Of a DNA stretch of 64,000 nt, positions 7,242 to 28,446 are shown piece after piece. The stretch spans positions 1 to 64,000 of IMG/VR virus record IMGVR_UViG_3300035698_035310; one strand, 5' to 3'. How positions within the stretch are numbered: the stretch's first letter is position 1; each line of letters begins with the position of its first letter. Below the pieces are notes generated by a model. The model was not told the origin of the DNA. It saw only the letters and a program-made list of their open reading frames with translations, and made no database searches. The translations under genes were made by a program, and so were the position numbers.

Positions 7242-7312
7242 TCCTTGACAATAAATTTTATATATGTATAATGAAATGATTGTATAATATTAATTGATCG
7301 AGGAGACCTAAT

Positions 7313-8488
7313 ATGAAACGGATTTATATGTTTCCGCTTTTTGGCATCATTGCATTGTTTTTTGCTATTACGCCACAAAAAGTGCAAGTTACACAAACTG
7401 TTGACGCCGGAGTATCAATTTCGGTTGAAGACAATACAGCAGAGGCAGGCAAGCGTTCAAGTAAACGTTCGAAGCCAAGGCGTGCGACCAAAAAACGAAC
7501 TTCGCGACCCAAATCGCGACCCACCAAACGAAAGACAACTAAGAAAAAAAAGGGTTGTACTTCTAATTGCACCAAAGGTGGTAGTGCAGGCAAGTTGAAT
7601 ACCAAAAAACTTTTCAAAAAAGGTGATTCAAAAGGTAAAGCAACGGCTGCAAAAGAACGCAAAAAAGCACCAAAGGCAGTTAAGACGACTAAAGCGAAAT
7701 CCACTTCAAGACCAACGGCTAAGAAGTCAAAACCCGTTGCTAAGGTTGGTTCTAAATCACGTCCTGTGATGAAAAAGTCTAAAAAGAAAGCGGTTACAGC
7801 ATAACGTGCTAAATCAGTTTCAGCGCCACAGGCAAGAAAATCACGTATGACTGCGAATAAGACTCGCGCAAGTAAGACGATGCGTTCACGAACACGTGCA
7901 CAAAGCCGAAATATGCGTTCTACGCGAGGTTATTACCCATCACGCTATCAATATAGCCGAAATCGACATTATGCCTCTTATGATAACTATGGTTGGGGTT
8001 ATGGATATATGCCAGGTAGAACTTATCACAGAGGTTGGGGCAATTATGGTTATGGTTATACGCGTGGCGGATTAGGCGTTGTTGACTATATGGTATTGTA
8101 TTCCATCTTTGGACACAGCAATACTTCAAGTGGTGATACGGTTGTTAACAACACATATGTTATCAACGGTGAAGAATCAGAAGTTACTGCGGTTCCAGAA
8201 GGTTCACATCTTGCCGGATTCGGTGATAAGAAAACATTGACTGTTCCTTCTGAGGATGGTGATGAAGTTATCGAAATCCCTGCTGGAAGCACGTATACAC
8301 AAACCGACAATGGTTTGCTGATTACTACACCAGACGGCGTTTCGGTGTTAGTGCCAAATGGCGATGATGCATATAAAGCGGAAGATGGATATGAAGTTCC
8401 AGAAGAAGCCGCTGAACCAATGGTATACGACGAACTTAAAGAAGCGAGTGCCGCAGAAGCGGATGAGCCTTGGTATAAGGTTTGGTAG
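7313..8488 (+). pseudogene. Secreted/membrane Lys-Arg-rich protein interrupted by in-frame TAA at 7802-7804 (ORFs 7313-7804 and 7847-8488 are one frame)
   Basis: ...KKAVTA*RAKSVSAPQARKSRMTANK: same low-complexity composition on both sides of the stop; N-terminal signal/TM. Confidence 0.65.
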
Positions 8489-8496
8489 AATAAAAA

Positions 8497-8535
8497 TGGG
8501 TGATCGCAATAAATGTGATCACCCACAATTTTAAT
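8497..8535 (+). terminator. Intrinsic terminator-like hairpin
   Basis: tgggtgatcgc/gtgatcaccca followed by T-rich tract. Confidence 0.6.
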
Positions 8536-8552
8536 AAAAAGGAGAATAGTTT

Positions 8553-9137
8553 ATGGAACCTGCATTTATAGTGTTTGGTGGTACGGTGTTTTATACAATA
8601 GTGGCAATTGTTTTTGTTGCATTGTTGGTGTTTATTGAATATGATATGGGTTGGGGTGCCTCGATAGTTACGCTAGCCGCAGTTTTGGCATTGACGTTCG
8701 GTGTAGAGATTAATATTTTTGTTTGGACATTGGCAAATCCATGGCTTGCGTTTAAATATTTGGTATATTATTTTGCCCTTGGAACTGGTTGGGCAATCGC
8801 TAAATGGTGCTTTTACTGTTTCAAATTGCGTCCGATTATTAAAGATGCAAAGATTAAATTTTTGAATACCCATAAGATAGCTGGTGATAAAATTCCTGTT
8901 GATAAAAAAGACGAATTTGCTAAAACAGTGACAGGCGATCCTTATTATACTGATAAAAATTATCCGCCACAATCAATGGAACATAAATCGGATTGGTTAA
9001 TGTGGGCAACTTGGTGGCCTACATCATTTTTCTGGACCATATTGAATCAACCGATTAAAAATGCATGGTTATTCATATATTCAAGAATTGCTGGAACAAT
9101 GCAACATATTGCAAATAAAATAACGTTGGTTGATTAA
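8553..9137 (+). CDS. Hypothetical multi-pass membrane protein
   Basis: AGGAG RBS, several hydrophobic segments. Confidence 0.8.
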   Translation: MEPAFIVFGGTVFYTIVAIVFVALLVFIEYDMGWGASIVTLAAVLALTFGVEINIFVWTLANPWLAFKYLVYYFALGTGWAIAKWCFYCFKLRPIIKDAKIKFLNTHKIAGDKIPVDKKDEFAKTVTGDPYYTDKNYPPQSMEHKSDWLMWATWWPTSFFWTILNQPIKNAWLFIYSRIAGTMQHIANKITLVD

Positions 9138-9160
9138 TATAACTGAATATGAGTTAGGTA

Positions 9161-9228
9161 AGTCCTTGGGATCACGTGCCGAGAGTTATTAGCATAAGCA
9201 ACGTGTGTCGTTGCCGCCCCAAGGGACT
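9161..9228 (+). ncRNA. Candidate small structured RNA
   Basis: agtccttggg/cccaagggact end pairing with one bulge; inner cacgt/acgtg helix. Confidence 0.35.
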
Positions 9229-9363
9229 GCCATGTTCTATTATACACTTGAAAAAATTTATTGAGTTTAAAAGGATTTATGCACATTATGGTATCTAGCA
9301 CCCGCATCCATGCATGGATGTTGAAGCCGGTGATTTAATCCAATAAATTTTTTCACTTTTTTA

Positions 9364-9392
9364 TTGACAATGTAATCGATATTTGATATATT
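9364..9392 (+). promoter_or_regulatory. Sigma70-type promoter of ncRNA block 1
   Basis: TTGACA-N17-TATATT. Confidence 0.75.
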
Positions 9393-9397
9393 ATAAG

Positions 9398-9747
9398 AAC
9401 GTTGGGACTGCGATCCCAATTGCACGGAGATGCAGTTTTCCCCCAATTGTGTTGCTGGGTTAACACACCATTCTGATGATGCACAGATAAAATTGCATTT
9501 CGCTAGGTATTCCGATCAATATACCTCGTTTGGTTTTACGTTAAAAACACTGTATTATGATAACACAGTGAATAATCAATAGTTTTGTTTAGTTTCCCTT
9601 TAAGAATTAAACTAGGTCGTAAGTTCCGAAATCAGTTTAATCATATTAATGGTTAAGACCTTTCGCAAAGGAATAGCTTATATCTAAAATCACGAAAGTG
9701 AGCATGGTGATTGAATCCGATATCAGATTAATTACCATGTAGATCGA
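9398..9747 (+). ncRNA. Candidate multi-hairpin ncRNA (block 1), ends at AGATCGA
   Basis: About ten consecutive hairpins e.g. ttggga/tcccaa, aggtat/atacct, cactgt/acagtg, cac-GAAA-gtg, catggtgatt/aattaccatg; no ORF. Confidence 0.6.
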
Positions 9748-9763
9748 ACAAAGGAGATAATTA

Positions 9764-9994
9764 GTGGAATTAAAATATGCAAAAGAACGATTTGGTGATA
9801 GTTTAACGTGTGGTTATTGTGGGATTGATCCTTTTGAAGAATTGTCATGGTTCGAAAAATTTTTTAATACACGCGGTGATAATTTTTCTTTTTTATATAA
9901 ACAATTGATGGAAGAAAGTTGTGTTATAGATTTGACGTGTGATAAATGTGGAAATAAATCATCGTTAACAAAAGATATGATTAATCATGATTAA
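9764..9994 (+). CDS. Small CxxC...CxxC zinc-ribbon hypothetical protein
   Basis: AAGGAG RBS; CGYC and CDKC. Confidence 0.65.
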   Translation: MELKYAKERFGDSLTCGYCGIDPFEELSWFEKFFNTRGDNFSFLYKQLMEESCVIDLTCDKCGNKSSLTKDMINHD

Positions 9995-10047
9995 TCAAAA
10001 AAGCAAAAAAATGCATTTGATAAAACACGATTAATCAAAAATAACTG

Positions 10048-10076
10048 TTGACAATGCATTAATTTTATGGTATTTT
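10048..10076 (+). promoter_or_regulatory. Sigma70-type promoter of ncRNA block 2, preceded by three GATTAATC palindromes (9979, 9989, 10029)
   Basis: TTGACA-N17-TATTTT with TG extension. Confidence 0.65.
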
Positions 10077-10148
10077 AGTCAAAATGAACAAAACAACGGG
10101 TATTTTAGCGTATTTTAATATACGGTTATAAATACCCACTAGATCGAT

Positions 10149-10285
10149 CATTGCTGCGTAGTTATTGGTTACTTCGATATAAAACAGCAAAGACATGGTG
10201 GAAATCCATGACGGTAGGGGAAACCCAACTATGAGAATTGCGCTATACTGATTGTTGACAAAACTGTTTTTTTAAGTGGCGAATG
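10149..10285 (+). ncRNA. Y-RNA-like element 1 (with T-loop arm)
   Basis: GCGTAG-N6-GTTACTTCG; catgg-TGGAAAT-ccatg arm; weaker end pairing. Confidence 0.5.
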
Positions 10286-10734
10286 CGCTTAATAAGATAG
10301 GGATGAGATTCTCGGGAAGTAATTCGAAATCACTCAGAAGAGTGGGTCCAATTGCGATATTTCACAATGGTCGAACAAATTTATTAAGAAGTTGCCTGAA
10401 TTTGAAATAACGGTAACAGATGACAAGCATATCAAAATGCTCTGGTTGTAGGCGGTAGGAAGTATAGACTCTCTTATCATGTCATGGAGGAACGGGCTTT
10501 AATATAGCTGAAAAGCGTATATAAAGGGTTCATTGGCTGAAAGCCTTTGATGTAGCTGTGGACGTTCAAGGGTGGTGGCACCATGACACTAGATCGAATA
10601 AAAGAACGTGGTCGTGCGATAAGGCGCGGGGTGGGTACCAGGACTCCACCGAAACAGATCGAACACTGGATAGGATAATCGGGACGGCCTCCGACCTATC
10701 GACGGATTAATATCCTTAGCCGATTAATAAATTC

Positions 10735-10799
10735 TGCCGTTGCGTAGAGATAAGATACTTCGATTGATGAAAACAGCTTATTTCGTTACTTTCTCGGCG
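10735..10799 (+). ncRNA. Y-RNA-like element 2 (short)
   Basis: GCGTAG-N6-GATACTTCG; gagataag/cttatttc and tgccg/cggcg helices. Confidence 0.65.
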
Positions 10800-10895
10800 A
10801 TACTAATTAACTGCTAAAGTATACTTTTTCAGTTACAACGTTAGTAAATGATTCACCAGATCATTTACTAACAGATCGATTTTTGAGGAAAATAT

Positions 10896-11153
10896 ATGAT
10901 AATACTCGACCAAAATACAGTAGAAGGCGACTTTGATCTTATAAGCGAAATTCATGGCGAACTTATAAAAGATTTGATGCTTGAAATCGTTGACGAAATA
11001 TCCCCACTGGGTTTAACCGTTATGCAATCATCATTGATATCAGTTGATGTCATCGTTAAAAAACACAAAGACGCAATAAAACCACATCTTGAAAAATATG
11101 ATTATAAAATAGGCGATAAAAAATATAAACTTGAAAATATAACATTCTATTGA
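10896..11153 (+). CDS. Hypothetical protein
   Basis: GAGG RBS, 85-aa ORF. Confidence 0.6.
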   Translation: MIILDQNTVEGDFDLISEIHGELIKDLMLEIVDEISPLGLTVMQSSLISVDVIVKKHKDAIKPHLEKYDYKIGDKKYKLENITFY

Positions 11154-11192
11154 TATATGATAAAAAATAAATGACATACAGGAGACCAAACC

Positions 11193-11945
11193 ATGTCAAA
11201 ATTTAACAACGCTGGCGTTGCACCAATCAATGTAACTACAATTCCAAATACACGCACCAAAGAAGGTTCACGATCATTTAAGTTTGATCATAAAATGGAA
11301 CTATATCAAACGGTAGTTACTACACTGTTTGGTGAAAGTAATTTTTATGAAAGCAAAGATGAACGCACCAGTCGTATTACACGTCTTGTTCGCAAGTGTG
11401 TAGAAGGCGGCGATGCACAATATGTTGCTAACCTTGCAGTATATGCTCGTGAGAAAATGTATCTTCGTTCTATTCCTGTATTTTTAACCGTTACACTTGC
11501 AAAAGAAATTCGCGCAGTTGATAGTTCCGACTACAACGTTCGATTATTGACAGGTCGTGTTATTCAACGTGCAGATGAAATTCGTGAAATGTTCGCTGCT
11601 GCGGAAGCAGTATTTGGTAATTCAAAGGATAATAAAACATTTAAGAAAGTTGTACCACGTGCGCTTCTTAAAGGTATCGCTGATTCGTTTAATAAATTTG
11701 ACGCTTACCAATTCAAAAAATGGTCCGGTGGAAAAGGTTCAATTAAATTCACCGACGTAATGCGCGTTGTTCATCCAACACCAAAGGATGAAGCACAGAA
11801 CGCAATCTTTAAGAACATCATGGAAGACACCTTGCCAGCAATCGATACTTGGGAAACCAATATCTCTGGTGATGGTTCTAATACAGAAAACTGGCAGTTA
11901 GTTGCTGATGCCAAAATAGAAAAAACTGCTTGGATTAGGGTATAA
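11193..11945 (+). CDS. rsr: TROVE/Ro60 RNA-binding protein, N-terminal half
   Basis: FGESNFYE, YAREKMYLRSIP, QRADEI, FDAYQFKKW, DVMRVVHPTP, TWET. Confidence 0.88.
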   Translation: MSKFNNAGVAPINVTTIPNTRTKEGSRSFKFDHKMELYQTVVTTLFGESNFYESKDERTSRITRLVRKCVEGGDAQYVANLAVYAREKMYLRSIPVFLTVTLAKEIRAVDSSDYNVRLLTGRVIQRADEIREMFAAAEAVFGNSKDNKTFKKVVPRALLKGIADSFNKFDAYQFKKWSGGKGSIKFTDVMRVVHPTPKDEAQNAIFKNIMEDTLPAIDTWETNISGDGSNTENWQLVADAKIEKTAWIRV

Positions 11946-11964
11946 TCAGTTATATTTTTGTTTC

Positions 11965-12016
11965 TTTACTGCTTTATTGATAAATAGATATAACAGGTTA
12001 TCATAAAGGCGGTAAA
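11965..12016 (+). promoter_or_regulatory. Late promoter GATAAATA (11979-11986) with RBS-sequestering hairpin for the endonuclease
   Basis: tttactgctttattgataa / ttatcataaaggcggtaaa; same logic as T4 I-TevI control. Confidence 0.7.
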
Positions 12017-12019
12017 AAC

Positions 12020-12973
12020 ATGAAGACAATAAAAGAATGGATTGAATGCAATCTTATAAAAGAAAATGGTTCATTGAATGAACGACGAATGGGAAAGTTG
12101 TCCAAAAAAGATAGTAGAACGTGGGTGGAAAAACATCATATCGATAGATTTGATGTTATAATAAAATGGGGAAATGGAAGGTCGTTTAAAGAATGCGTCT
12201 ATATGATATTACAAAATATAATAAACATACCATCATGTAAGATATGTGATAATGATGTAGCATTTATAGATAATAAAAATGGTTATAGATTATATTGTTC
12301 AACTGTATGTATGAATAATGACCCAGAAAGAATAATAGAAATAGAAAAAACTAAAAGATCAAATGGTTCATATGATCAAAAAAGAAAACGATTAGAAGAA
12401 ACTAATATAAAAAAATATGGAAAACCGTTTTTTGTTAATAGAAAAAAAGGAAAAGACACATTAAGAAAAAACTTTGGCGTTGATCATCCGGCACAATCGT
12501 CTATCGTTAAAAAGAAAATGAAAGATACAATGGTTAAAAAATGGGGCGTAGAAAATCCCATGTATATATCAACTTTTGTTGATAAAATGATACAAAGTAG
12601 AGGAAATAAAATAACCGGAAGTATCAGGTGTAGAATAAAACGATTTGGTGATAAAGAGATTCCATATCAAGGAACATATGAAAAAATATTTTTAGAAAGT
12701 TTATCGAATAAAAATATCGAACGAATAAAAAGAGGTAATAAAGCAGTTTATTTTATAGACGGGAAACAAAAAACATATTATCCAGATTTTGTTATAGAAA
12801 ACACAGTTTATGAAATAAAATCGAAATGGACGTGGGATAATAAAGGTAAGAATAAAAGATTAAGAGTAATAAACAAGTTGAAGTTGAGATCGGCTAAACG
12901 GCAAGGTCATAATGTCATTTTGGTATTAGATCATAAACAGTTAACTTACAACGAAGCAATACGCTTGTTATAA
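12020..12973 (+). mobile_element. Free-standing homing endonuclease (PD-(D/E)XK, TnsA-like C-terminus) inserted in the TROVE gene
   Basis: CKIC, YCSTVC, KKWGVENP-type repeats, YYPDFVIENTVYEIKS. Confidence 0.8.
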
Positions 12974-12987
12974 AGGAGACCAAACCA

Positions 12988-13983
12988 ATGCAAGTTATAG
13001 ATAAGAAATTTTTAAAAGATAAAGATAATGTTGTATTCACAGATGAATTTGATATTATTAATGGTGTAAAATACCAAAAAGTTAAATGGGATATAGAGCA
13101 TCCAAAAATGGGTCTGATGGCAAGAGTTCGAAATCTTCGTAATTTAACCAAGCATGATGTTGATTTGGATTACACTATAAAATGTTTGACTGATGCTAAC
13201 GCAGTCAAAAAATCAAAGATGCTCCCGTTTCGCTGGTATTCGGCGTATAGAGAACTTGGTGGTTCTGGAATAGAAGCAAACAATCATTGGTATTATAAAG
13301 AACCAGCTAAACCAGACGTTATGGCTTCACCACATTTGTTGGCTGCATTGGAAGATGCATTTGACATGAGTGTATCCAATTTGCCAGACTTGGGCGATGA
13401 TGTACTTATCGTAGTTGACCAAAGTGGTTCTATGTAAGACACTATCAGCCAACATAGCACAGTAACATGTGCTGAAATCGCTAGTGTGCTTGGTGCTGCG
13501 GTGTGGTTCAATCAGATTCGCCAAGGTAAAAAAGCTATGGTAGCAGGTTTTGCATCCACTGGAAAGGTTTACAATTGGAGTGCACGAACTAGTGCGCTTG
13601 CTGCGGCTAAAGAAATGATGAACACCAGTTTGGGTGGTGCAACGAATATCGGCACTGCGTGGGGTGCTGCAAAAATGGCTAATCTTAAACCATCAACTAT
13701 TGTGGTTCTTAGTGATATGCAAATGACTGGCGATAGCCGCGCTCGTTATAATACAATTATGGTTCCAGAGCAATACGGTCTTGCTGATGATGACACTTTG
13801 AAAATAAGTATCAACATTAAAGGTTATGATAATAGCCCGTTGGCTATGAACAATGGCTGGATTCAAATTGCTGGATGGTCAGAAAAAATATTTGATCTTA
13901 TTGACGCAATGCGCAAACCAGGTGATGCTGTTAAGTTGATTAATGATCTTGATTTAAACTTGACAAAGTCGCAACAGGTATAG
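12988..13983 (+). pseudogene. rsr: TROVE/Ro60 C-terminal half incl. vWA domain, with in-frame TAA at 13435-13437
   Basis: KMGLMARVRNLRNL, SKMLPFRWYSAY, VDQSGSM*DTISQHSTVTCAEIASVLGAA, GGATNI, LSDMQ, GWSEKIF. Confidence 0.8.
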
Positions 13984-17721: not shown

Positions 17722-17960
17722 AGATCGAATACAGTGTTAACGCGGAACGAGACTGCTAGGAACACTTAAAATATACCTAATATGGGCGCGTTGTGGATGG
17801 ATTTCCTTTTGTGGAATGATAAAAGCAATGGTAGGAAGCAAAGCGACCTACTAGGGAAAGCGTTATATGCTTTCCTGATAAGTTATTTTGTATGGAAGTG
17901 CCATTAAAGCAGAACAATTGGTTTGGCGACCAAGCACCTTCGGGGCATAAAATCTGCTAC
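17722..17960 (+). ncRNA. Candidate ornate RNA immediately after the attenuator, opening with AGATCGA
   Basis: tagg/ccta, tggtagg/cctacta, ggaaagc/gctttcc, gcaga/tctgc, ttggt/accaa, c-UUCG-g. Confidence 0.5.
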
Positions 17961-17996
17961 TACTATACTATTTTAATCATAACTAAGTGTCACAAA

Positions 17997-18400
17997 ATAT
18001 TGTATGGTGTAGTGGTAACACGCTGCCTTTATCGGCGGAGCCGTGGGTTCGAGTCCTACTATGATATTTGGATTACGTTCAGTGTGCACACCGAACGCCA
18101 CAAATTATCTGTTATTATCGCGATAGTGATAGATAATGTTGGGTCACTTAGTTATGATTAAAGTTTTTAGGGTGTTCGTCTAGTGGATTAGGACGCGCCG
18201 CCTTGGGTAGTTGGAGTTCGATTCTCCTTAGCAACGGTTACGTAAATCCGCACGGTGAGACATTGGTTCGAATCCAATACATGTTAAAATAACGATTTCA
18301 CATGAGATGTATAGTTTTAATGGATAAATCAGGCATGAGCCTTGTGCGGCAAGATAGTGGGTTCGATTCCCCTTGCGTTGAATGTGAAATGATGCTATAT
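17997..18400 (+). ncRNA. Degenerate tRNA-like elements (17997-18068, ~18169-18285, ~18295-18390)
   Basis: Four GGTTCGA/GAGTTCGA T-arms and D-arm-like segments but defective anticodon or acceptor arms. Confidence 0.55.
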
Positions 18401-23683: not shown

Positions 23684-23769
23684 TCGGATATAGGAGAATT
23701 GGTAGACCCAGAAGATTGTTAATCTTCCGCAGCAATGCATTCCAGGTTCGAGTCCTGGTATCCGAGCCA
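23684..23769 (+). tRNA. tRNA-Asn(GTT) with long variable arm
   Basis: gaaga-ttGTTaa-tcttc; gca-gcaa-tgc V arm; GCCA. Confidence 0.8.
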
Positions 23770-23770
23770 A

Positions 23771-23908
23771 TAACACCGTAGCGTAGAAAATAGTTACTTC
23801 GTTTCACTCACGACTGGAATGGGTTCGATTCCCATGCCCTGCGTAAGCAGGGTTTAGTGTAATGGTAGCACAGTATATCTCTATTTTCGTTTTTTACTCG
23901 GTGTTGTT
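23771..23908 (+). ncRNA. yrlA: YrlA-class Y RNA (tRNA-mimic)
   Basis: taacaccg/cggtgttg and gaaaatag/ctattttc end helices enclosing T-arm (atggg-ttcgatt-cccat), loop-closed acceptor (ccctgc-gtaa-gcaggg) and D-arm in permuted order. Confidence 0.8.
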
Positions 23909-23956
23909 ATTAATAAATAGAATTATACAAATTATTAGATTGGAGTTGTTATTTAA

Positions 23957-24287: not shown

Positions 24288-24444
<157 letters not shown>

Positions 24445-24452
24445 GATTTCAT

Positions 24453-28368: not shown

Positions 28369-28446
28369 TGACTAGTAGCTCAGTGGTTTAGAGCGGGGAG
28401 TTCTAAACTCTCGACAGCGTTGGTTCAAATCCAACCTGGTCAACCA
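28369..28446 (+). tRNA. Amber suppressor tRNA (CTA)
   Basis: gggag-ttCTAaa-ctctc; intact cloverleaf; ACCA. Confidence 0.85.

What the first reader, a model, noticed from the sequence alone, without database searches (positions are those of the whole stretch)
9398..10879. About 1.5-kb structured ncRNA island upstream of Ro60, punctuated by AGATCGA after closing helices
Seen: two promoter-driven, almost ORF-free blocks packed with hairpins and closed multi-helix domains. AGATCGA occurs at 9741, 10141, 10591, 10656 and 10873, each 0-5 nt after the 3' strand of a helix. A sixth copy (17722) follows the tRNA-array attenuator. My rough estimate at ~33% GC is under 0.1 expected copies in this span. 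Two Y-RNA-like modules are embedded. Inference: an array of RNA modules with a shared processing or protein-binding tag (or a boxA-like antitermination site), or one large ornate RNA comparable in size class to GOLLD/ROOL. I do not recognise it as a named family.
Basis: partly seen in the sequence, partly recalled or inferred. Interest (0 to 1): 0.82.

Follow-up and report, generated by a model that had tools for sequence, protein, structure and literature searches.

The report
Phage Y-RNA array with AGAUCGA junctions
The gene-free stretch upstream of this giant phage's Ro60 gene is a promoter-driven string of separate folded RNAs, two of them relatives of the known Ro60-partner "Y RNAs", joined by a conserved 7-letter linker (AGAUCGA) whose job, probably marking where the string is cut or where a protein docks, is still unknown.

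Summary
AGATCGA lies at all six stated + strand sites, five of them within 1.14 kb where about 0.1 is expected. It recurs in the homologous gene-free island of at least eight related uncultured huge phages.

The island runs from 9138 to 10895, wider than reported, and holds one 76-aa ORF. It is an array of separately folding RNAs behind two conserved sigma70-type promoters, not one ornate RNA.

Two units (10146-10372 and 10735-10799) carry the stem of the known YrlA Y RNAs: P1, GCG-UAG, a 7-bp P2, then UACUUCG. Covariation supports this fold strongly. The same core occurs in about 79 bacterial Ro60 loci, in RNAs that Rfam's YrlA model hits below threshold.

The other units (block A, C, D, E, X, Y) match no Rfam family.

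AGAUCGA is specific to this phage clade. AGAUC is an accessible linker, and GA forms the first two base pairs of the next stem.

My best guess for its function is an RNA-level junction signal for processing or 5'-end definition. A Ro60-docking role (compare vertebrate GGUCCGA) is not excluded. No RNA-seq data were available.

Overall this is a new variant of a known kind.

The parts
9145..9237 (+). Element X: structured RNA in the 3' UTR of the 194-aa gene. It has an outer helix (GAAUAUG/CAUGUUC), a 10-bp helix with a bulged G, and an inner hairpin.
   Evidence: Aligned with L013 and L019. The outer helix and the inner hairpin change in a compensatory way between the window and L013. In L013 this element is followed by GAU-AGAUCGA; the window has no motif here.
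9250..9362 (+). Element Y: structured RNA closed by a 14-bp stem (9250-9263 / 9341-9354) followed by a U-run, so it looks like a terminator. It ends the upstream transcript.
   Evidence: the window stem GAAAAAAUUUAUUG/CAAUAAAUUUUUUC corresponds to GAAAGAGUUUAUG/CAUAAACUCUUUC in L013 and L019, with changes on both sides. The internal blocks are conserved.
9364..9392 (+). Promoter PA (TTGACA-17-TATATT with an extended TG). The inferred transcription start is near 9399.
   Evidence: 11 of 12 positions match. A TTGACA-type promoter sits at the same place in L019 and L020. All 13 such promoters in the window are on the + strand.
9399..9740 (+). Block A: a structured RNA of about 340 nt that ends in hairpin 9703-9739, whose loop (C/G)GAUAUCA is conserved.
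   Evidence: MFE z-score -3.1. Homologs exist in L019 and L020. RNAalifold predicts 68 pairs, 17 of them with compensatory changes, in the 5' and terminal hairpins among others. No Rfam match. L013 lacks this block.
9741..9747 (+). AGAUCGA copy 1. It lies 1 nt after the terminal hairpin of block A and 4 nt before the AGGAG ribosome-binding site of the 76-aa ORF.
   Evidence: The same position is occupied in L019 (4699) and L020 (2649).
9764..9994 (+). Small ORF of 76 aa (GTG start, two CxxC pairs). It interrupts the 'ORF-free' island.
   Evidence: No Pfam hit. Relatives carry an unrelated small membrane-protein ORF at this place.
10048..10076 (+). Promoter PB (TTGACA-17-TATTTT with an extended TG). 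The inferred transcription start is near 10083.
   Evidence: Conserved in L013, L019, L023, L024, L111 and L112.
10098..10137 (+). Leader hairpin B1, which contains the conserved GGTTATAAATA.
   Evidence: GGTTATAAATA sits 6 nt before the first motif in the window, L013, L020 and L024, and 11 nt before it in L019.
10141..10147 (+). AGAUCGA copy 2. It forms the 5' base of the large Y-like module.
   Evidence: Orthologous copies are at L013 10945, L019 4979, L024 3076 and L112 1937. In this module UCGA also pairs with the 3' UCGA of GGUCGAAC.
10146..10372 (+). Large Y-RNA-like module. P1 is 10146-10153 / 10365-10372. The core GCGUAG is at 10156-10161. P2 is 10162-10168 / 10348-10354. UUACUUCG follows. 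The apical domain of about 180 nt includes a T-loop-like hairpin (CAUGGUGGAAAUCCAUG).
   Evidence: model R1, E = 2.5e-4, 5' part only; 4 orthologs; 23 of 67 predicted pairs show compensatory changes. It shares the core with YrlA-type RNAs.
10377..10590 (+). Element C: structured RNA with a conserved core, CAUGGAGGAAC...GUUCAAGGG..GGUGGCACCAUG (10483-10585).
   Evidence: Read; L013 has two copies of the core. No Rfam match. GC content rises to 0.41-0.48 here.
10591..10597 (+). AGAUCGA copy 3, between elements C and D.
   Evidence: The ortholog is at L013 11542.
10598..10655 (+). Element D: a 58-nt unit with two hairpins (ACGUGGUC, then CGUGC-GAUAAG-GCGCG, then GGUGGGUACCAGGACUCCACC).
   Evidence: Conserved in L013 (11549 onward) and L019 (5225 onward). 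The first hairpin shows a G-C to A-U compensatory change in L019.
10656..10662 (+). AGAUCGA copy 4, between elements D and E.
   Evidence: L019 has a copy after its D element (5273). L013 has none at this junction.
10663..10734 (+). Element E (ACACUGGAUAGG...): a conserved structured spacer before the small Y-like module.
   Evidence: A similar stretch lies in L013 at about 11769-11837.
10735..10799 (+). Minimal Y-RNA-like module of 65 nt with no tRNA-like domain: P1 UGCCG/CGGCG, UU, GCG-UAG, P2 AGAUAAG/CUUAUUU, AUACUUCG, and a 3' CGU...CUC.
   Evidence: model R1 scores 72.7 bits, E = 1.5e-16. On 13 modules the fold has 92% of cells paired, 10 of 15 pairs changed on both sides, 0 of 500 shuffles as good, and slid controls at 30-44%.
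10840..10872 (+). Hairpin H: a perfect 13-bp stem directly abutting the last motif.
10873..10879 (+). AGAUCGA copy 5, 5 nt before the GAGG ribosome-binding site of the 85-aa ORF that precedes Ro60.
   Evidence: Relatives have a copy in the Ro60 5' leader: L013 11990, L019 5802, L112 2896, and L024 3759 (as AGAUCGC).
11193..13983 (+). Ro60 (TROVE) gene, the protein partner expected for the Y-like modules. In this window it is interrupted.
   Evidence: Residues 1-240 map to 11193-11912 and residues 239-525 to 13096-13956, with an in-frame TAA at 13438.
17722..17728 (+). AGAUCGA copy 6. It lies after a terminator-like hairpin and at the 5' side of a conserved leader RNA of about 270 nt that precedes the tRNA array.
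   Evidence: L013 lacks a copy here but has one at the start of the neighbouring transcript (15175). L024 has copies at 8340 and 8884 in the same kind of leader.
23771..23906 (+). Y-RNA-like module inside the tRNA array. Its apical part is a T arm, a hairpin and a D-arm-like stem, which is the YrlA order. It is not preceded by AGAUCGA.
   Evidence: model R1 scores 57.6 bits. Rfam YrlA model positions 24-84 align to 23813-23874 with a weak score of 15.4 bits.
24360..24445 (+). Minimal Y-RNA-like module between tRNA-Gly and tRNA-Trp. It is not preceded by AGAUCGA.
   Evidence: model R1 scores 71.5 bits. The ortholog is L013 19717-19798.

Best explanation
The region from 9138 to 10895 is a multi-unit non-coding RNA locus belonging to the Ro60 gene cluster of an uncultured huge phage. 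The contig is at least 359 kb, and a sister contig is 571 kb.

Host-type sigma70 promoters (PA, PB) drive long transcripts made of separately folding RNAs. Two of these are Y RNAs of the YrlA lineage reduced to, or elaborated from, the Ro60-binding stem. The rest are unnamed structured RNAs. The downstream mRNAs (small ORFs and Ro60) are inferred to be co-transcribed with them.

AGAUCGA is the junction element of this array. AGAUC is an exposed single-stranded linker that starts 0-5 nt after the previous closing helix. GA forms the first two base pairs of the next stem.

I infer that it acts in the RNA as the recognition site of a trans-acting factor that delimits the units. Most likely this is an endonucleolytic processing or 5'-end-defining signal that releases the individual Y-like RNAs and gives the downstream mRNAs short leaders. 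This would play the part that flanking tRNAs (RNase P/Z) play for the Y-like modules sitting in the tRNA array.

Shown here: the motif's excess, its conservation, its structural context, and the Y-RNA homology of the modules.

Inferred only: transcription, cutting, and the identity of the factor.
For: Motif excess and conservation:
- The window has 5 copies where 0.13 are expected (P = 2.7e-7).
- Across nine related islands there are 20 copies in 8.6 kb, against 8 in 132 kb of the same strand outside them, a 38-fold difference in rate.
- L112 adds six more copies and L111 adds one.
- Copies sit at orthologous junctions while the neighbouring linker bases vary.

Structural context:
- AGAUC is predicted to be more accessible than the background (median unpaired probability 0.21 against 0.07, Mann-Whitney P = 2.6e-5, n = 30).
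- In every module directly preceded by AGAUCGA/AGAUCGU, P1 starts at G6. The 3' strand ends UC or UU. A7-to-U in L022/L023 is matched by U-to-A on the other strand.
- The distance to the downstream stem is fixed at 0. The distance to the upstream helix varies from 0 to 5 nt.

The modules are Y RNAs:
- The fold shows strong covariation.
- The same GNCGUA(N0-1)G-N7-(U/A)UACUUCG core is found in 107 + strand hits against 1 - strand hit across about 79 bacterial Ro60 loci and in distant viral Ro60 loci. There it is followed by a T arm, a hairpin and a D arm.
- Those RNAs are hit by Rfam RF02553 YrlA with E-values down to 5.7e-9.
- The layout matches the published one: a 5' motif GNCGAAN0-1G, a 7-nt stem strand, then YUAY at nt 22-25 (PMC4201824 sections 5-6; bioRxiv 10.1101/312249).

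Independence of motif and module:
- The Y-like modules in the tRNA array (23771-23906 and 24360-24445) lack AGAUCGA and are flanked by tRNAs.
- AGAUCGA also precedes non-Y units, ribosome-binding sites and a tRNA.

Precedent: Y RNAs of M. smegmatis and D. radiodurans are cut out of polycistronic precursors (PMC4201824 sections 8-9).
Against: - No RNA data: no RNA run holding the sequence was listed, so transcription and ends are unobserved.
- No candidate nuclease was identified.
- The 7-mer is not avoided on the coding strand outside the islands (9 seen, 8.6 expected). A nuclease that cut every naked AGAUCGA is therefore unlikely, and recognition would have to depend on context.
- Some junctions lack the motif. 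The 'GCCG' module has none on its 5' side in any lineage, and the motif comes and goes at single junctions between relatives.
- In L013 one copy lies at or within 2 nt of a predicted transcription start. Cutting there would be pointless, which fits a 5'-terminal tag or docking site better.
- The motif resembles the vertebrate Ro60 contact sequence GGUCCGA, including a GA paired with UU or UC.
Confidence: 0.45

Rival explanations
1. AGAUCGA is itself a Ro60 (or other protein) docking site. It would be the conserved 5' strand at the base of each stem, analogous to GGUCCGA of animal and Deinococcus Y RNAs. The island would then assemble several Ro60 particles, or mark RNAs and mRNA leaders as Ro60 clients, without necessarily being cut.
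For: - Compared with GGUCCGA, 4 of 7 letters are identical, and positions 1 and 4 keep their purine/pyrimidine class.
- As in vertebrate Y RNA, C5 is unpaired and G6-A7 pair with UC or UU on the 3' strand.
- The motif is glued to the downstream stem with zero spacing.
- Variants GGUCGAAC, AAUCGAAC and AGUCGAAC close the 3' side of the large module.
- GAUCG and GGUCG sit at the same junction in the more distant relatives L026 and L028.
- One copy lies at a predicted transcript 5' end.
- There is no avoidance of the motif in coding sequence.
Against: - By homology, the YrlA-type Ro60 motif in these modules is GCGUAG, 8-10 nt further up the stem.
- Y-like modules in the tRNA array keep GCGUAG but have no AGAUCGA.
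- AGAUCGA stands in front of units with no Y-like stem, and 0-5 nt before ribosome-binding sites, where a bound 60-kDa ring would block translation.
- The motif is absent from all other Ro60 loci examined, viral or bacterial.
Confidence: 0.27
2. AGAUCGA is a transcription-level signal. It could be a boxA-like antitermination site, or the initial transcribed sequence of a phage-specific promoter, for example the T4-late-like TATAAATA placed 6 nt upstream.
For: - TATAAATA-N6-AGATCGA is conserved at the first motif in the window, L013, L020 and L024.
- One L013 copy is at a sigma70 transcription start and one L024 copy is at about +13.
- The array is long and untranslated.
Against: - Only the first copy of each island has TATAAATA upstream.
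- TATAAATA occurs at chance frequency in the window, 10 on + and 4 on - against about 7 expected.
- Copies repeat every 60-450 nt inside transcripts.
- The untranslated tRNA arrays lack the motif.
- There is no similarity to boxA.
Confidence: 0.08
3. The whole span is one large ornate RNA of the GOLLD/ROOL size class, and AGAUCGA is a repeated tertiary or closing-helix element within it.
For: - The 803-nt span folds better than shuffles (z = -4.5).
- In the MFE structure the 10141 copy pairs with the 10873 copy, because the motif is semi-palindromic.
Against: - No Rfam hit to any large RNA family.
- The units are individually present, absent or duplicated in relatives. L013 lacks block A and has C twice. 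L023 has four Y-like modules in 0.5 kb. L026 and L028 have one.
- An ORF, promoters and a terminator-like stem lie inside the span.
- The long-range pair is not supported in the relatives.
Confidence: 0.03
4. The motif is a passive relic. It would be the flank of a tandemly duplicated module, or a chance cluster, with no function of its own.
For: The Y-like modules are clearly paralogous, and the GA of the motif is part of their P1 stem.
Against: - The motif flanks non-homologous units.
- It is invariant while adjacent bases diverge, in lineages whose anchor protein is only 54-63% identical.
- P = 2.7e-7 in the window alone.
Confidence: 0.04

Closest known systems
YrlA / bacterial and phage Y RNAs (Rfam RF02553; Chen et al. 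2014, PMC4201824)
   Same: - Encoded next to Ro60 on the same strand.
- A stem formed by the 5' and 3' ends carries G-N-CG-x-A-(N)-G, followed by a 7-bp helix and YUAY.
- Multiple copies per locus.
- Polycistronic with tRNAs, or upstream of Ro60, and processed from a precursor.
- One window copy (23771-23906) has the T arm, hairpin and D arm order.
   Different: - The island copies have no tRNA-like domain. One is a bare 65-nt stem and one carries an unrelated apical domain of about 180 nt.
- The motif reads (U/A)GCGUAG rather than GNCGAA.
- They have an extra basal helix P1 and the AGAUCGA flank.
- They do not reach the Rfam score.
YrlB / Yrn2-type stem-only Y RNAs (PMC4201824 section 9)
   Same: A second Ro60-bound RNA of the same locus, consisting of a long hairpin without a full tRNA-like module.
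   Different: No sequences were available to compare. The apical loop here is not notably pyrimidine-rich.
Vertebrate Y RNA Ro60-binding helix (GGUCCGA / UUGAC)
   Same: A 7-nt conserved 5' strand at the base of the terminal stem. GA pairs with UU or UC, and the C before it is unpaired.
   Different: - Positions 1-4 (AGAU) have no conserved 3' partner.
- The motif also occurs away from any Y-like stem.
Punctuated precursors: tRNA-punctuated operons, CRISPR pre-crRNA with a Cas6 tag, T7 RNase III sites
   Same: A short conserved signal at the foot of hairpins between functional RNAs of one transcript, and immediately upstream of mRNA ribosome-binding sites.
   Different: - The hairpins here are all different, so they are not repeats.
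- There are no spacers, no long double-stranded RNase III-type stems, and no known enzyme.

Membership tests
YrlA / Y RNA (RF02553) | Encoded within about 4 kb of Ro60 on the same strand | tested here: met
   Modules 10146-10372 and 10735-10799 lie 0.4-1.0 kb upstream of the Ro60 start at 11193, on the + strand.
YrlA / Y RNA (RF02553) | Long stem formed by pairing of the RNA's 5' and 3' parts | tested here: met
   P1, GCG/CGY and P2 together give 92% of cells paired. Ten of 15 pairs change on both sides, 0 of 500 shuffles do as well, and slid controls reach 30-44%.
YrlA / Y RNA (RF02553) | 5' motif GNCGAAN0-1G (the putative Ro60 site) in that stem | tested here: inconclusive
   The island modules read (U/A)GCGUAG, so CG, A and G are kept, position 5 is U, and the first G is missing. 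The form GNCGUA(N0-1)G is the rule in about 79 bacterial Ro60 loci, whose RNAs are hit by RF02553. This is probably the same site, but it does not match the published consensus literally.
YrlA / Y RNA (RF02553) | Conserved YUAY after the 7-nt stem strand | tested here: met
   UUAC or AUAC comes directly after P2 in every copy. The spacing agrees with YUAY at nt 22-25 of Salmonella YrlA (PMC4201824; bioRxiv 10.1101/312249).
YrlA / Y RNA (RF02553) | tRNA-like domain (T arm, acceptor-like hairpin, D arm) | tested here: not met
   Absent from 10735-10799. Module 10146-10372 has only a T-loop-like hairpin. It is present only in the tRNA-array copy 23771-23906, weakly. The island copies are therefore Y-RNA relatives, not YrlA in the strict sense.
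YrlA / Y RNA (RF02553) | Reaches the Rfam gathering score (69 bits) | tested here: not met
   No RF02553 hit in 8500-13500 even at E <= 10. Bacterial and viral relatives also stay at 31-44 bits.
YrlA / Y RNA (RF02553) | Bound by Ro60/Rsr | not testable with these tools
   This needs RIP or gel-shift experiments with the phage Ro60.
Large ornate RNAs (GOLLD, ROOL, HEARO, OLE, raiA) | Match to the family covariance model; one closed multi-domain fold | tested here: not met
   No hit at gathering score or at E <= 10. The unit content differs between relatives.
boxA / nut antitermination sites | boxA-like sequence, one or two promoter-proximal copies, associated with a boxB hairpin | tested here: not met
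   The 7-mer is unrelated to boxA (from my own knowledge of the consensus). The island has five copies 60-450 nt apart, and the tRNA arrays have none.
Small self-cleaving ribozymes (hammerhead, twister, pistol, hatchet, HDV-like) | Match to the Rfam models around the putative cut site | tested here: not met
   No hit at E <= 10 in 8500-13500, or at E <= 1 in L013, L019 and L020.
CRISPR-like repeat arrays | Near-identical direct repeats separated by unique spacers | tested here: not met
   Only 13-15-nt repeats centred on the motif itself were found, and the hairpins differ from one another.

The most novel reading that the evidence does not exclude
AGAUCGA is the recognition tag of a dedicated, sequence- and context-specific system in a clade of huge phages. 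The system would be either an endoribonuclease or Ro60 itself. It would either cut a 'Y-RNA operon' into a set of different Ro60 partner RNAs, or load several Ro60 rings along it. This would be a punctuation code for non-coding RNA arrays distinct from tRNA/RNase P, RNase III and Cas6. The island would also contain several new structured RNA classes (block A of about 340 nt, C, D, X, Y, and the tRNA-array leader).
Probability: 0.3. Interest if true: 0.75.

Novelty: new variant of a known kind. Interest (0 to 1): 0.6.

Why it matters
Ro60 and Y RNAs form an RNA quality-control and decay machine found from bacteria to humans. How bacterial Y RNAs are released from precursors, and what Ro60 recognises in them, is only partly known.

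This locus offers three things:
- A natural series of stripped-down and elaborated Y-RNA stems, from 65 nt to about 230 nt, next to a phage Ro60.
- A sharply defined 7-nt junction motif, conserved in at least 8 phage lineages, that can be mutated and mapped directly.
- Several conserved structured RNAs with no family assignment, in genomes that also carry tRNA arrays, EF-G, IF3 and a 2H phosphoesterase.

If the motif proves to be a processing or docking code, it would show how huge phages organise their own non-coding RNA production. If not, the locus is still a useful extension of the YrlA family beyond what Rfam detects.

Tried and rejected
- Rfam at gathering score and at permissive E-values on the window region and on relatives gave nothing except tRNAs. 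Sub-threshold YrlA hits appeared only in distant loci.
- blastn of the island against GenBank phages found no match. tblastn of Ro60 found no phage above 32% identity, so no cultured relative exists there.
- Three IMG/VR pattern or protein scans were unhelpful. One found only distant Ro60 loci. One found nothing. One found three identical chance matches inside a GC-rich coding region.
- The JGI metagenome scan returned only the 571-kb sister contig.
- The RNA-seq run search listed none. Laying DNA contigs of four salt-lake runs gave only identical low-depth fragments with no variants.
- I tested whether the motif pairs with UUCGAU of the module, with the next motif copy (GAUC/GAUC), or with upstream UUUGGUUUU in block A. 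None of these is consistently possible or conserved. Only the large module pairs UCGA with its own 3' UCGA.
- A hammerhead-type AUC cleavage triplet has no supporting core and no Rfam hit.
- A T4-late-type promoter is not supported, because TATAAATA occurs at chance frequency.
- A search for avoidance of the 7-mer in coding sequence found none.
- A literature search for the 7-mer found nothing relevant.
Full report
**Origin of the window.** The window is the first 64 kb of IMG/VR contig UViG_3300035698_035310 (359 kb). A 570,750-bp JGI contig carries the same locus, and the DNA is found in salt-lake metagenomes. GC content is 36%, and 27-28 tRNA genes lie on the + strand. All 13 strong sigma70-type promoters in the window are on the + strand.

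**The observation.** AGATCGA is at 9741, 10141, 10591, 10656, 10873 and 17722 on the + strand, and the four other copies are on the - strand. From the shuffles, about 0.07 copies are expected in the reported span on one strand. The composition-based expectation for the 1758-nt island is 0.129, giving P(>=5) = 2.7e-7. No other arrangement of the same seven letters occurs more than three times. Each copy lies 0-5 nt after the 3' strand of a helix that can be read directly from the sequence. The two promoters are the best sigma70 matches in the region. There are two corrections. The structured, gene-free stretch begins at 9138, right after the 194-aa gene. A 76-aa ORF with a good ribosome-binding site (9764-9994) separates the two blocks.

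**Relatives.** GenBank phages hold nothing similar. The upstream 194-aa protein has only four other clusters among 5.8 billion proteins. Their contigs (L013/L014, L019, L020) show the same order: ClpX, an unknown gene, the 194-aa gene, a gene-free island, Ro60, then IF3.

The Ro60 of L013 defines a tight clade at 64-80% identity, well separated from the next group at 47-50% and from bacterial Ro60 at 38% or less. I fetched further members: L022, L023, L024, L026-L030, L111 and L112. All have a gene-free island of 0.35-1.9 kb in front of Ro60.

AGATCGA is in these islands 20 times in 8.6 kb, against 8 times in 132 kb of the same strand outside them, a 38-fold difference in rate. L112 adds six copies and L111 one. 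Four of the 'outside' copies are in other non-coding leaders. Copies sit at orthologous junctions while the bases next to them differ. The motif is absent from every more distant Ro60 locus, viral or bacterial. In L026 and L028 the corresponding junction reads GAUCG or GGUCG.

**What the units are.** The relatives made a repeated module obvious. It consists of:
- a closing stem P1;
- two unpaired bases;
- GCG;
- an unpaired UAG;
- a 7-nt strand of P2;
- (A/U)UACUUCG;
- an apical part of 20 to about 190 nt;
- the other P2 strand;
- CGY, pairing with GCG;
- a U-rich stretch ending in CUC, whose last C closes P1.

On 13 short copies, 92% of cells are paired and 10 of 15 pairs change on both sides. 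None of 500 shuffles reaches any of the five measures, and sliding the partners drops pairing to 30-44%. A covariance model built from them finds four copies in the window: 10138-10254 (5' part of the large module), 10724-10806, 23763-23910 and 24352-24449.

The same core, G-N-CGUA-(N)-G, then seven bases, then (U/A)UACUUCG, occurs on the Ro60 strand of the distant viral loci. It also occurs in about 79 bacterial Ro60 loci, mostly Bacteroidota, with 107 hits on the + strand against 1 on the - strand. There it is followed by a T arm, a capped hairpin and a D arm. That is the published architecture of YrlA Y RNAs: a 5' motif GNCGAAN0-1G thought to be the Ro60 site, YUAY at nt 22-25, then V, T, AS and D (PMC4201824 sections 5-6; bioRxiv 10.1101/312249).

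Rfam's YrlA model (RF02553) hits these RNAs below its threshold but significantly, at 31-44 bits with E-values down to 5.7e-9. Its consensus (ggCgaAUGC, a 7-nt stem strand, then CUAc) lines up with the module. The window copy at 23771-23906 has the T, AS and D domain, with a weak RF02553 local hit.

The two island copies do not have this domain. Copy 10735-10799 is a bare 65-nt stem. Copy 10146-10372 carries a different apical domain of about 180 nt with a T-loop-like hairpin, conserved in L013, L019 and L112 (23 of 67 predicted pairs compensatory). They are Y-RNA relatives but fail the tRNA-domain criterion of YrlA proper.

The remaining units are conserved and show compensatory changes, but match no Rfam family:
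- X (9145-9237) and Y (9250-9362), the latter with a terminator-like closing stem;
- block A (9399-9740);
- the leader hairpin B1, and elements C, D, E and H.

Units are lost, duplicated or replaced between relatives. L013 lacks block A and has the C core twice. L023 has four Y-like modules in 0.5 kb. L026 and L028 have one. This, together with the internal promoters, the terminator-like stem and the ORF, rules out a single large RNA.

**Anatomy of AGAUCGA.** In every module directly preceded by AGAUCGA/AGAUCGU, P1 begins exactly at G6, the 3' strand ends in UC or UU, and an A7-to-U change in L022/L023 is matched on the other strand. AGAUC is predicted to be unpaired more often than the island background (median 0.21 against 0.07; P = 2.6e-5, n = 30). 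The spacing to the downstream stem is fixed, while the spacing to the upstream helix varies from 0 to 5 nt. The motif therefore belongs to the unit that follows it.

The motif also precedes units that are not Y-like (D, E and the tRNA-array leader), ribosome-binding sites (9741, 10873, L020 2649, L024 3759) and a tRNA (L024 8884). One copy lies at a predicted transcription start (L013 15175). Conversely, the Y-like modules in the tRNA array have no AGAUCGA and are flanked by tRNAs. Motif and module are thus independent elements.

**Mechanism.** These points are shown: a strand-specific, accessible, conserved junction element in a promoter-driven array of structured RNAs next to Ro60. Everything further is inferred.

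I favour an RNA-level delimiting signal, meaning processing or 5'-end definition by a trans-acting factor, for three reasons:
- Y RNAs are known to be cut from polycistronic precursors (PMC4201824 sections 8-9).
- The motif stands where tRNAs stand for the array-embedded modules.
- It separates non-coding units from mRNAs.

Several points count against a simple sequence-specific nuclease:
- The 7-mer is not avoided on the coding strand outside the islands (9 seen, 8.6 expected).
- Some junctions lack it.
- One copy is at a transcript start.

The main rival is that AGAUCGA is a Ro60 (or other protein) docking site. It resembles GGUCCGA, with the same unpaired C and paired GA. Variants GGUCGAAC, AAUCGAAC and AGUCGAAC close the large module. 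By homology, however, the YrlA-type site in these RNAs is GCGUAG, and modules without AGAUCGA exist.

Transcriptional roles are weakly supported. The conserved GGTTATAAATA six bases upstream of the first copy is intriguing, but TATAAATA is not enriched in the window.

No RNA run was listed, and DNA contigs from other runs showed no variants. The decisive data, RNA ends and Ro60 binding, must therefore come from experiments.

**Verdict.** The locus is a new variant of a known kind: a Y-RNA/Ro60 locus carrying a clade-specific junction code and several unclassified structured RNAs. Interest is moderate to high for RNA and phage specialists.

Noticed in passing
window 11193-13983: The Ro60 gene is interrupted. 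Residues 1-240 map to 11193-11912 and residues 239-525 to 13096-13956. A 1.18-kb insert between them carries ORF 12020-12973 (317 aa; Pfam DUF7487 at E = 6.9e-13, weak CdiA_C). This looks like an intron with a homing-endonuclease-like gene, but there is no Rfam intron hit. The 3' part also has an in-frame TAA at 13438. Relatives have intact Ro60 genes of 518-543 aa.
   Followed up: partly
L007 8272-8407; L008 7592-7718: These are true tRNA scaffolds with an acceptor stem plus CCA, a D arm and a T arm. Their anticodon loop is replaced by a circularly permuted copy of the Ro60-binding-type module (P2', CGYUUG.., a capped P1, GNCGUAG, P2, AUACUUCG). Rfam calls them tRNAs of 127-136 nt.
   Followed up: partly
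window 17729-17990; L013 15585-15850; L024 ~8700-8880: A conserved, GC-richer structured RNA of about 270 nt lies between a terminator-like hairpin and the first tRNA of the array. It has no Rfam match.
   Followed up: no
window 18069-18400: A run of T-arm-like hairpins (GGAGUUCGAUUCUCC, AUUGGUUCGAAUCCAAU, GUGGGUUCGAUUCCCC) and D-arm-like pieces is not called as tRNA by either tool. The adjacent call at 17997-18068 has a 2-nt 'anticodon'.
   Followed up: no
window 10125-10134 and orthologs in L013, L019, L020, L024, L112: GGTTATAAATA, which contains the T4-late-promoter-like TATAAATA, is conserved with a fixed 6-nt spacing to the first AGATCGA in four lineages (11 nt in L019; GGTTATTAAATA in L112). 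It is also the 3' strand of hairpin B1.
   Followed up: partly
window 28369-28446: ARAGORN calls a tRNA with anticodon CUA, which would be an amber suppressor (labelled Pyl). This may be relevant to possible stop-codon read-through in this phage.
   Followed up: no
L022 1824-3008: An IS605-type TnpB gene (OrfB_IS605, Cas12f-like TNB domain) is inserted on the opposite strand at the upstream edge of the Ro60 island. The otherwise near-identical L023 lacks it.
   Followed up: no
L013, L023, L026, L027 (upstream of the islands): A 2H phosphoesterase gene (Pfam 2_5_RNA_ligase2) is conserved in the cluster. In L026 and L027 it directly abuts the Y-RNA/Ro60 unit. EF-G, IF3, PTH2, IMPDH and ClpX are also encoded nearby.
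   Followed up: no
L031 (JALOAT010000054.1): A 25-kb contig binned in a Gammaproteobacteria MAG carries a Ro60 that is 68% identical to the phage clade. It is either a mis-binned phage contig or a hint at the host. The sigma70-type promoters would fit a proteobacterial host.
   Followed up: no
window 7313-7804: An ORF encodes a 163-aa protein with a signal-like N-terminus and an extremely lysine/arginine-rich body. GATCGA sits directly before its ribosome-binding site, at 7296.
   Followed up: no
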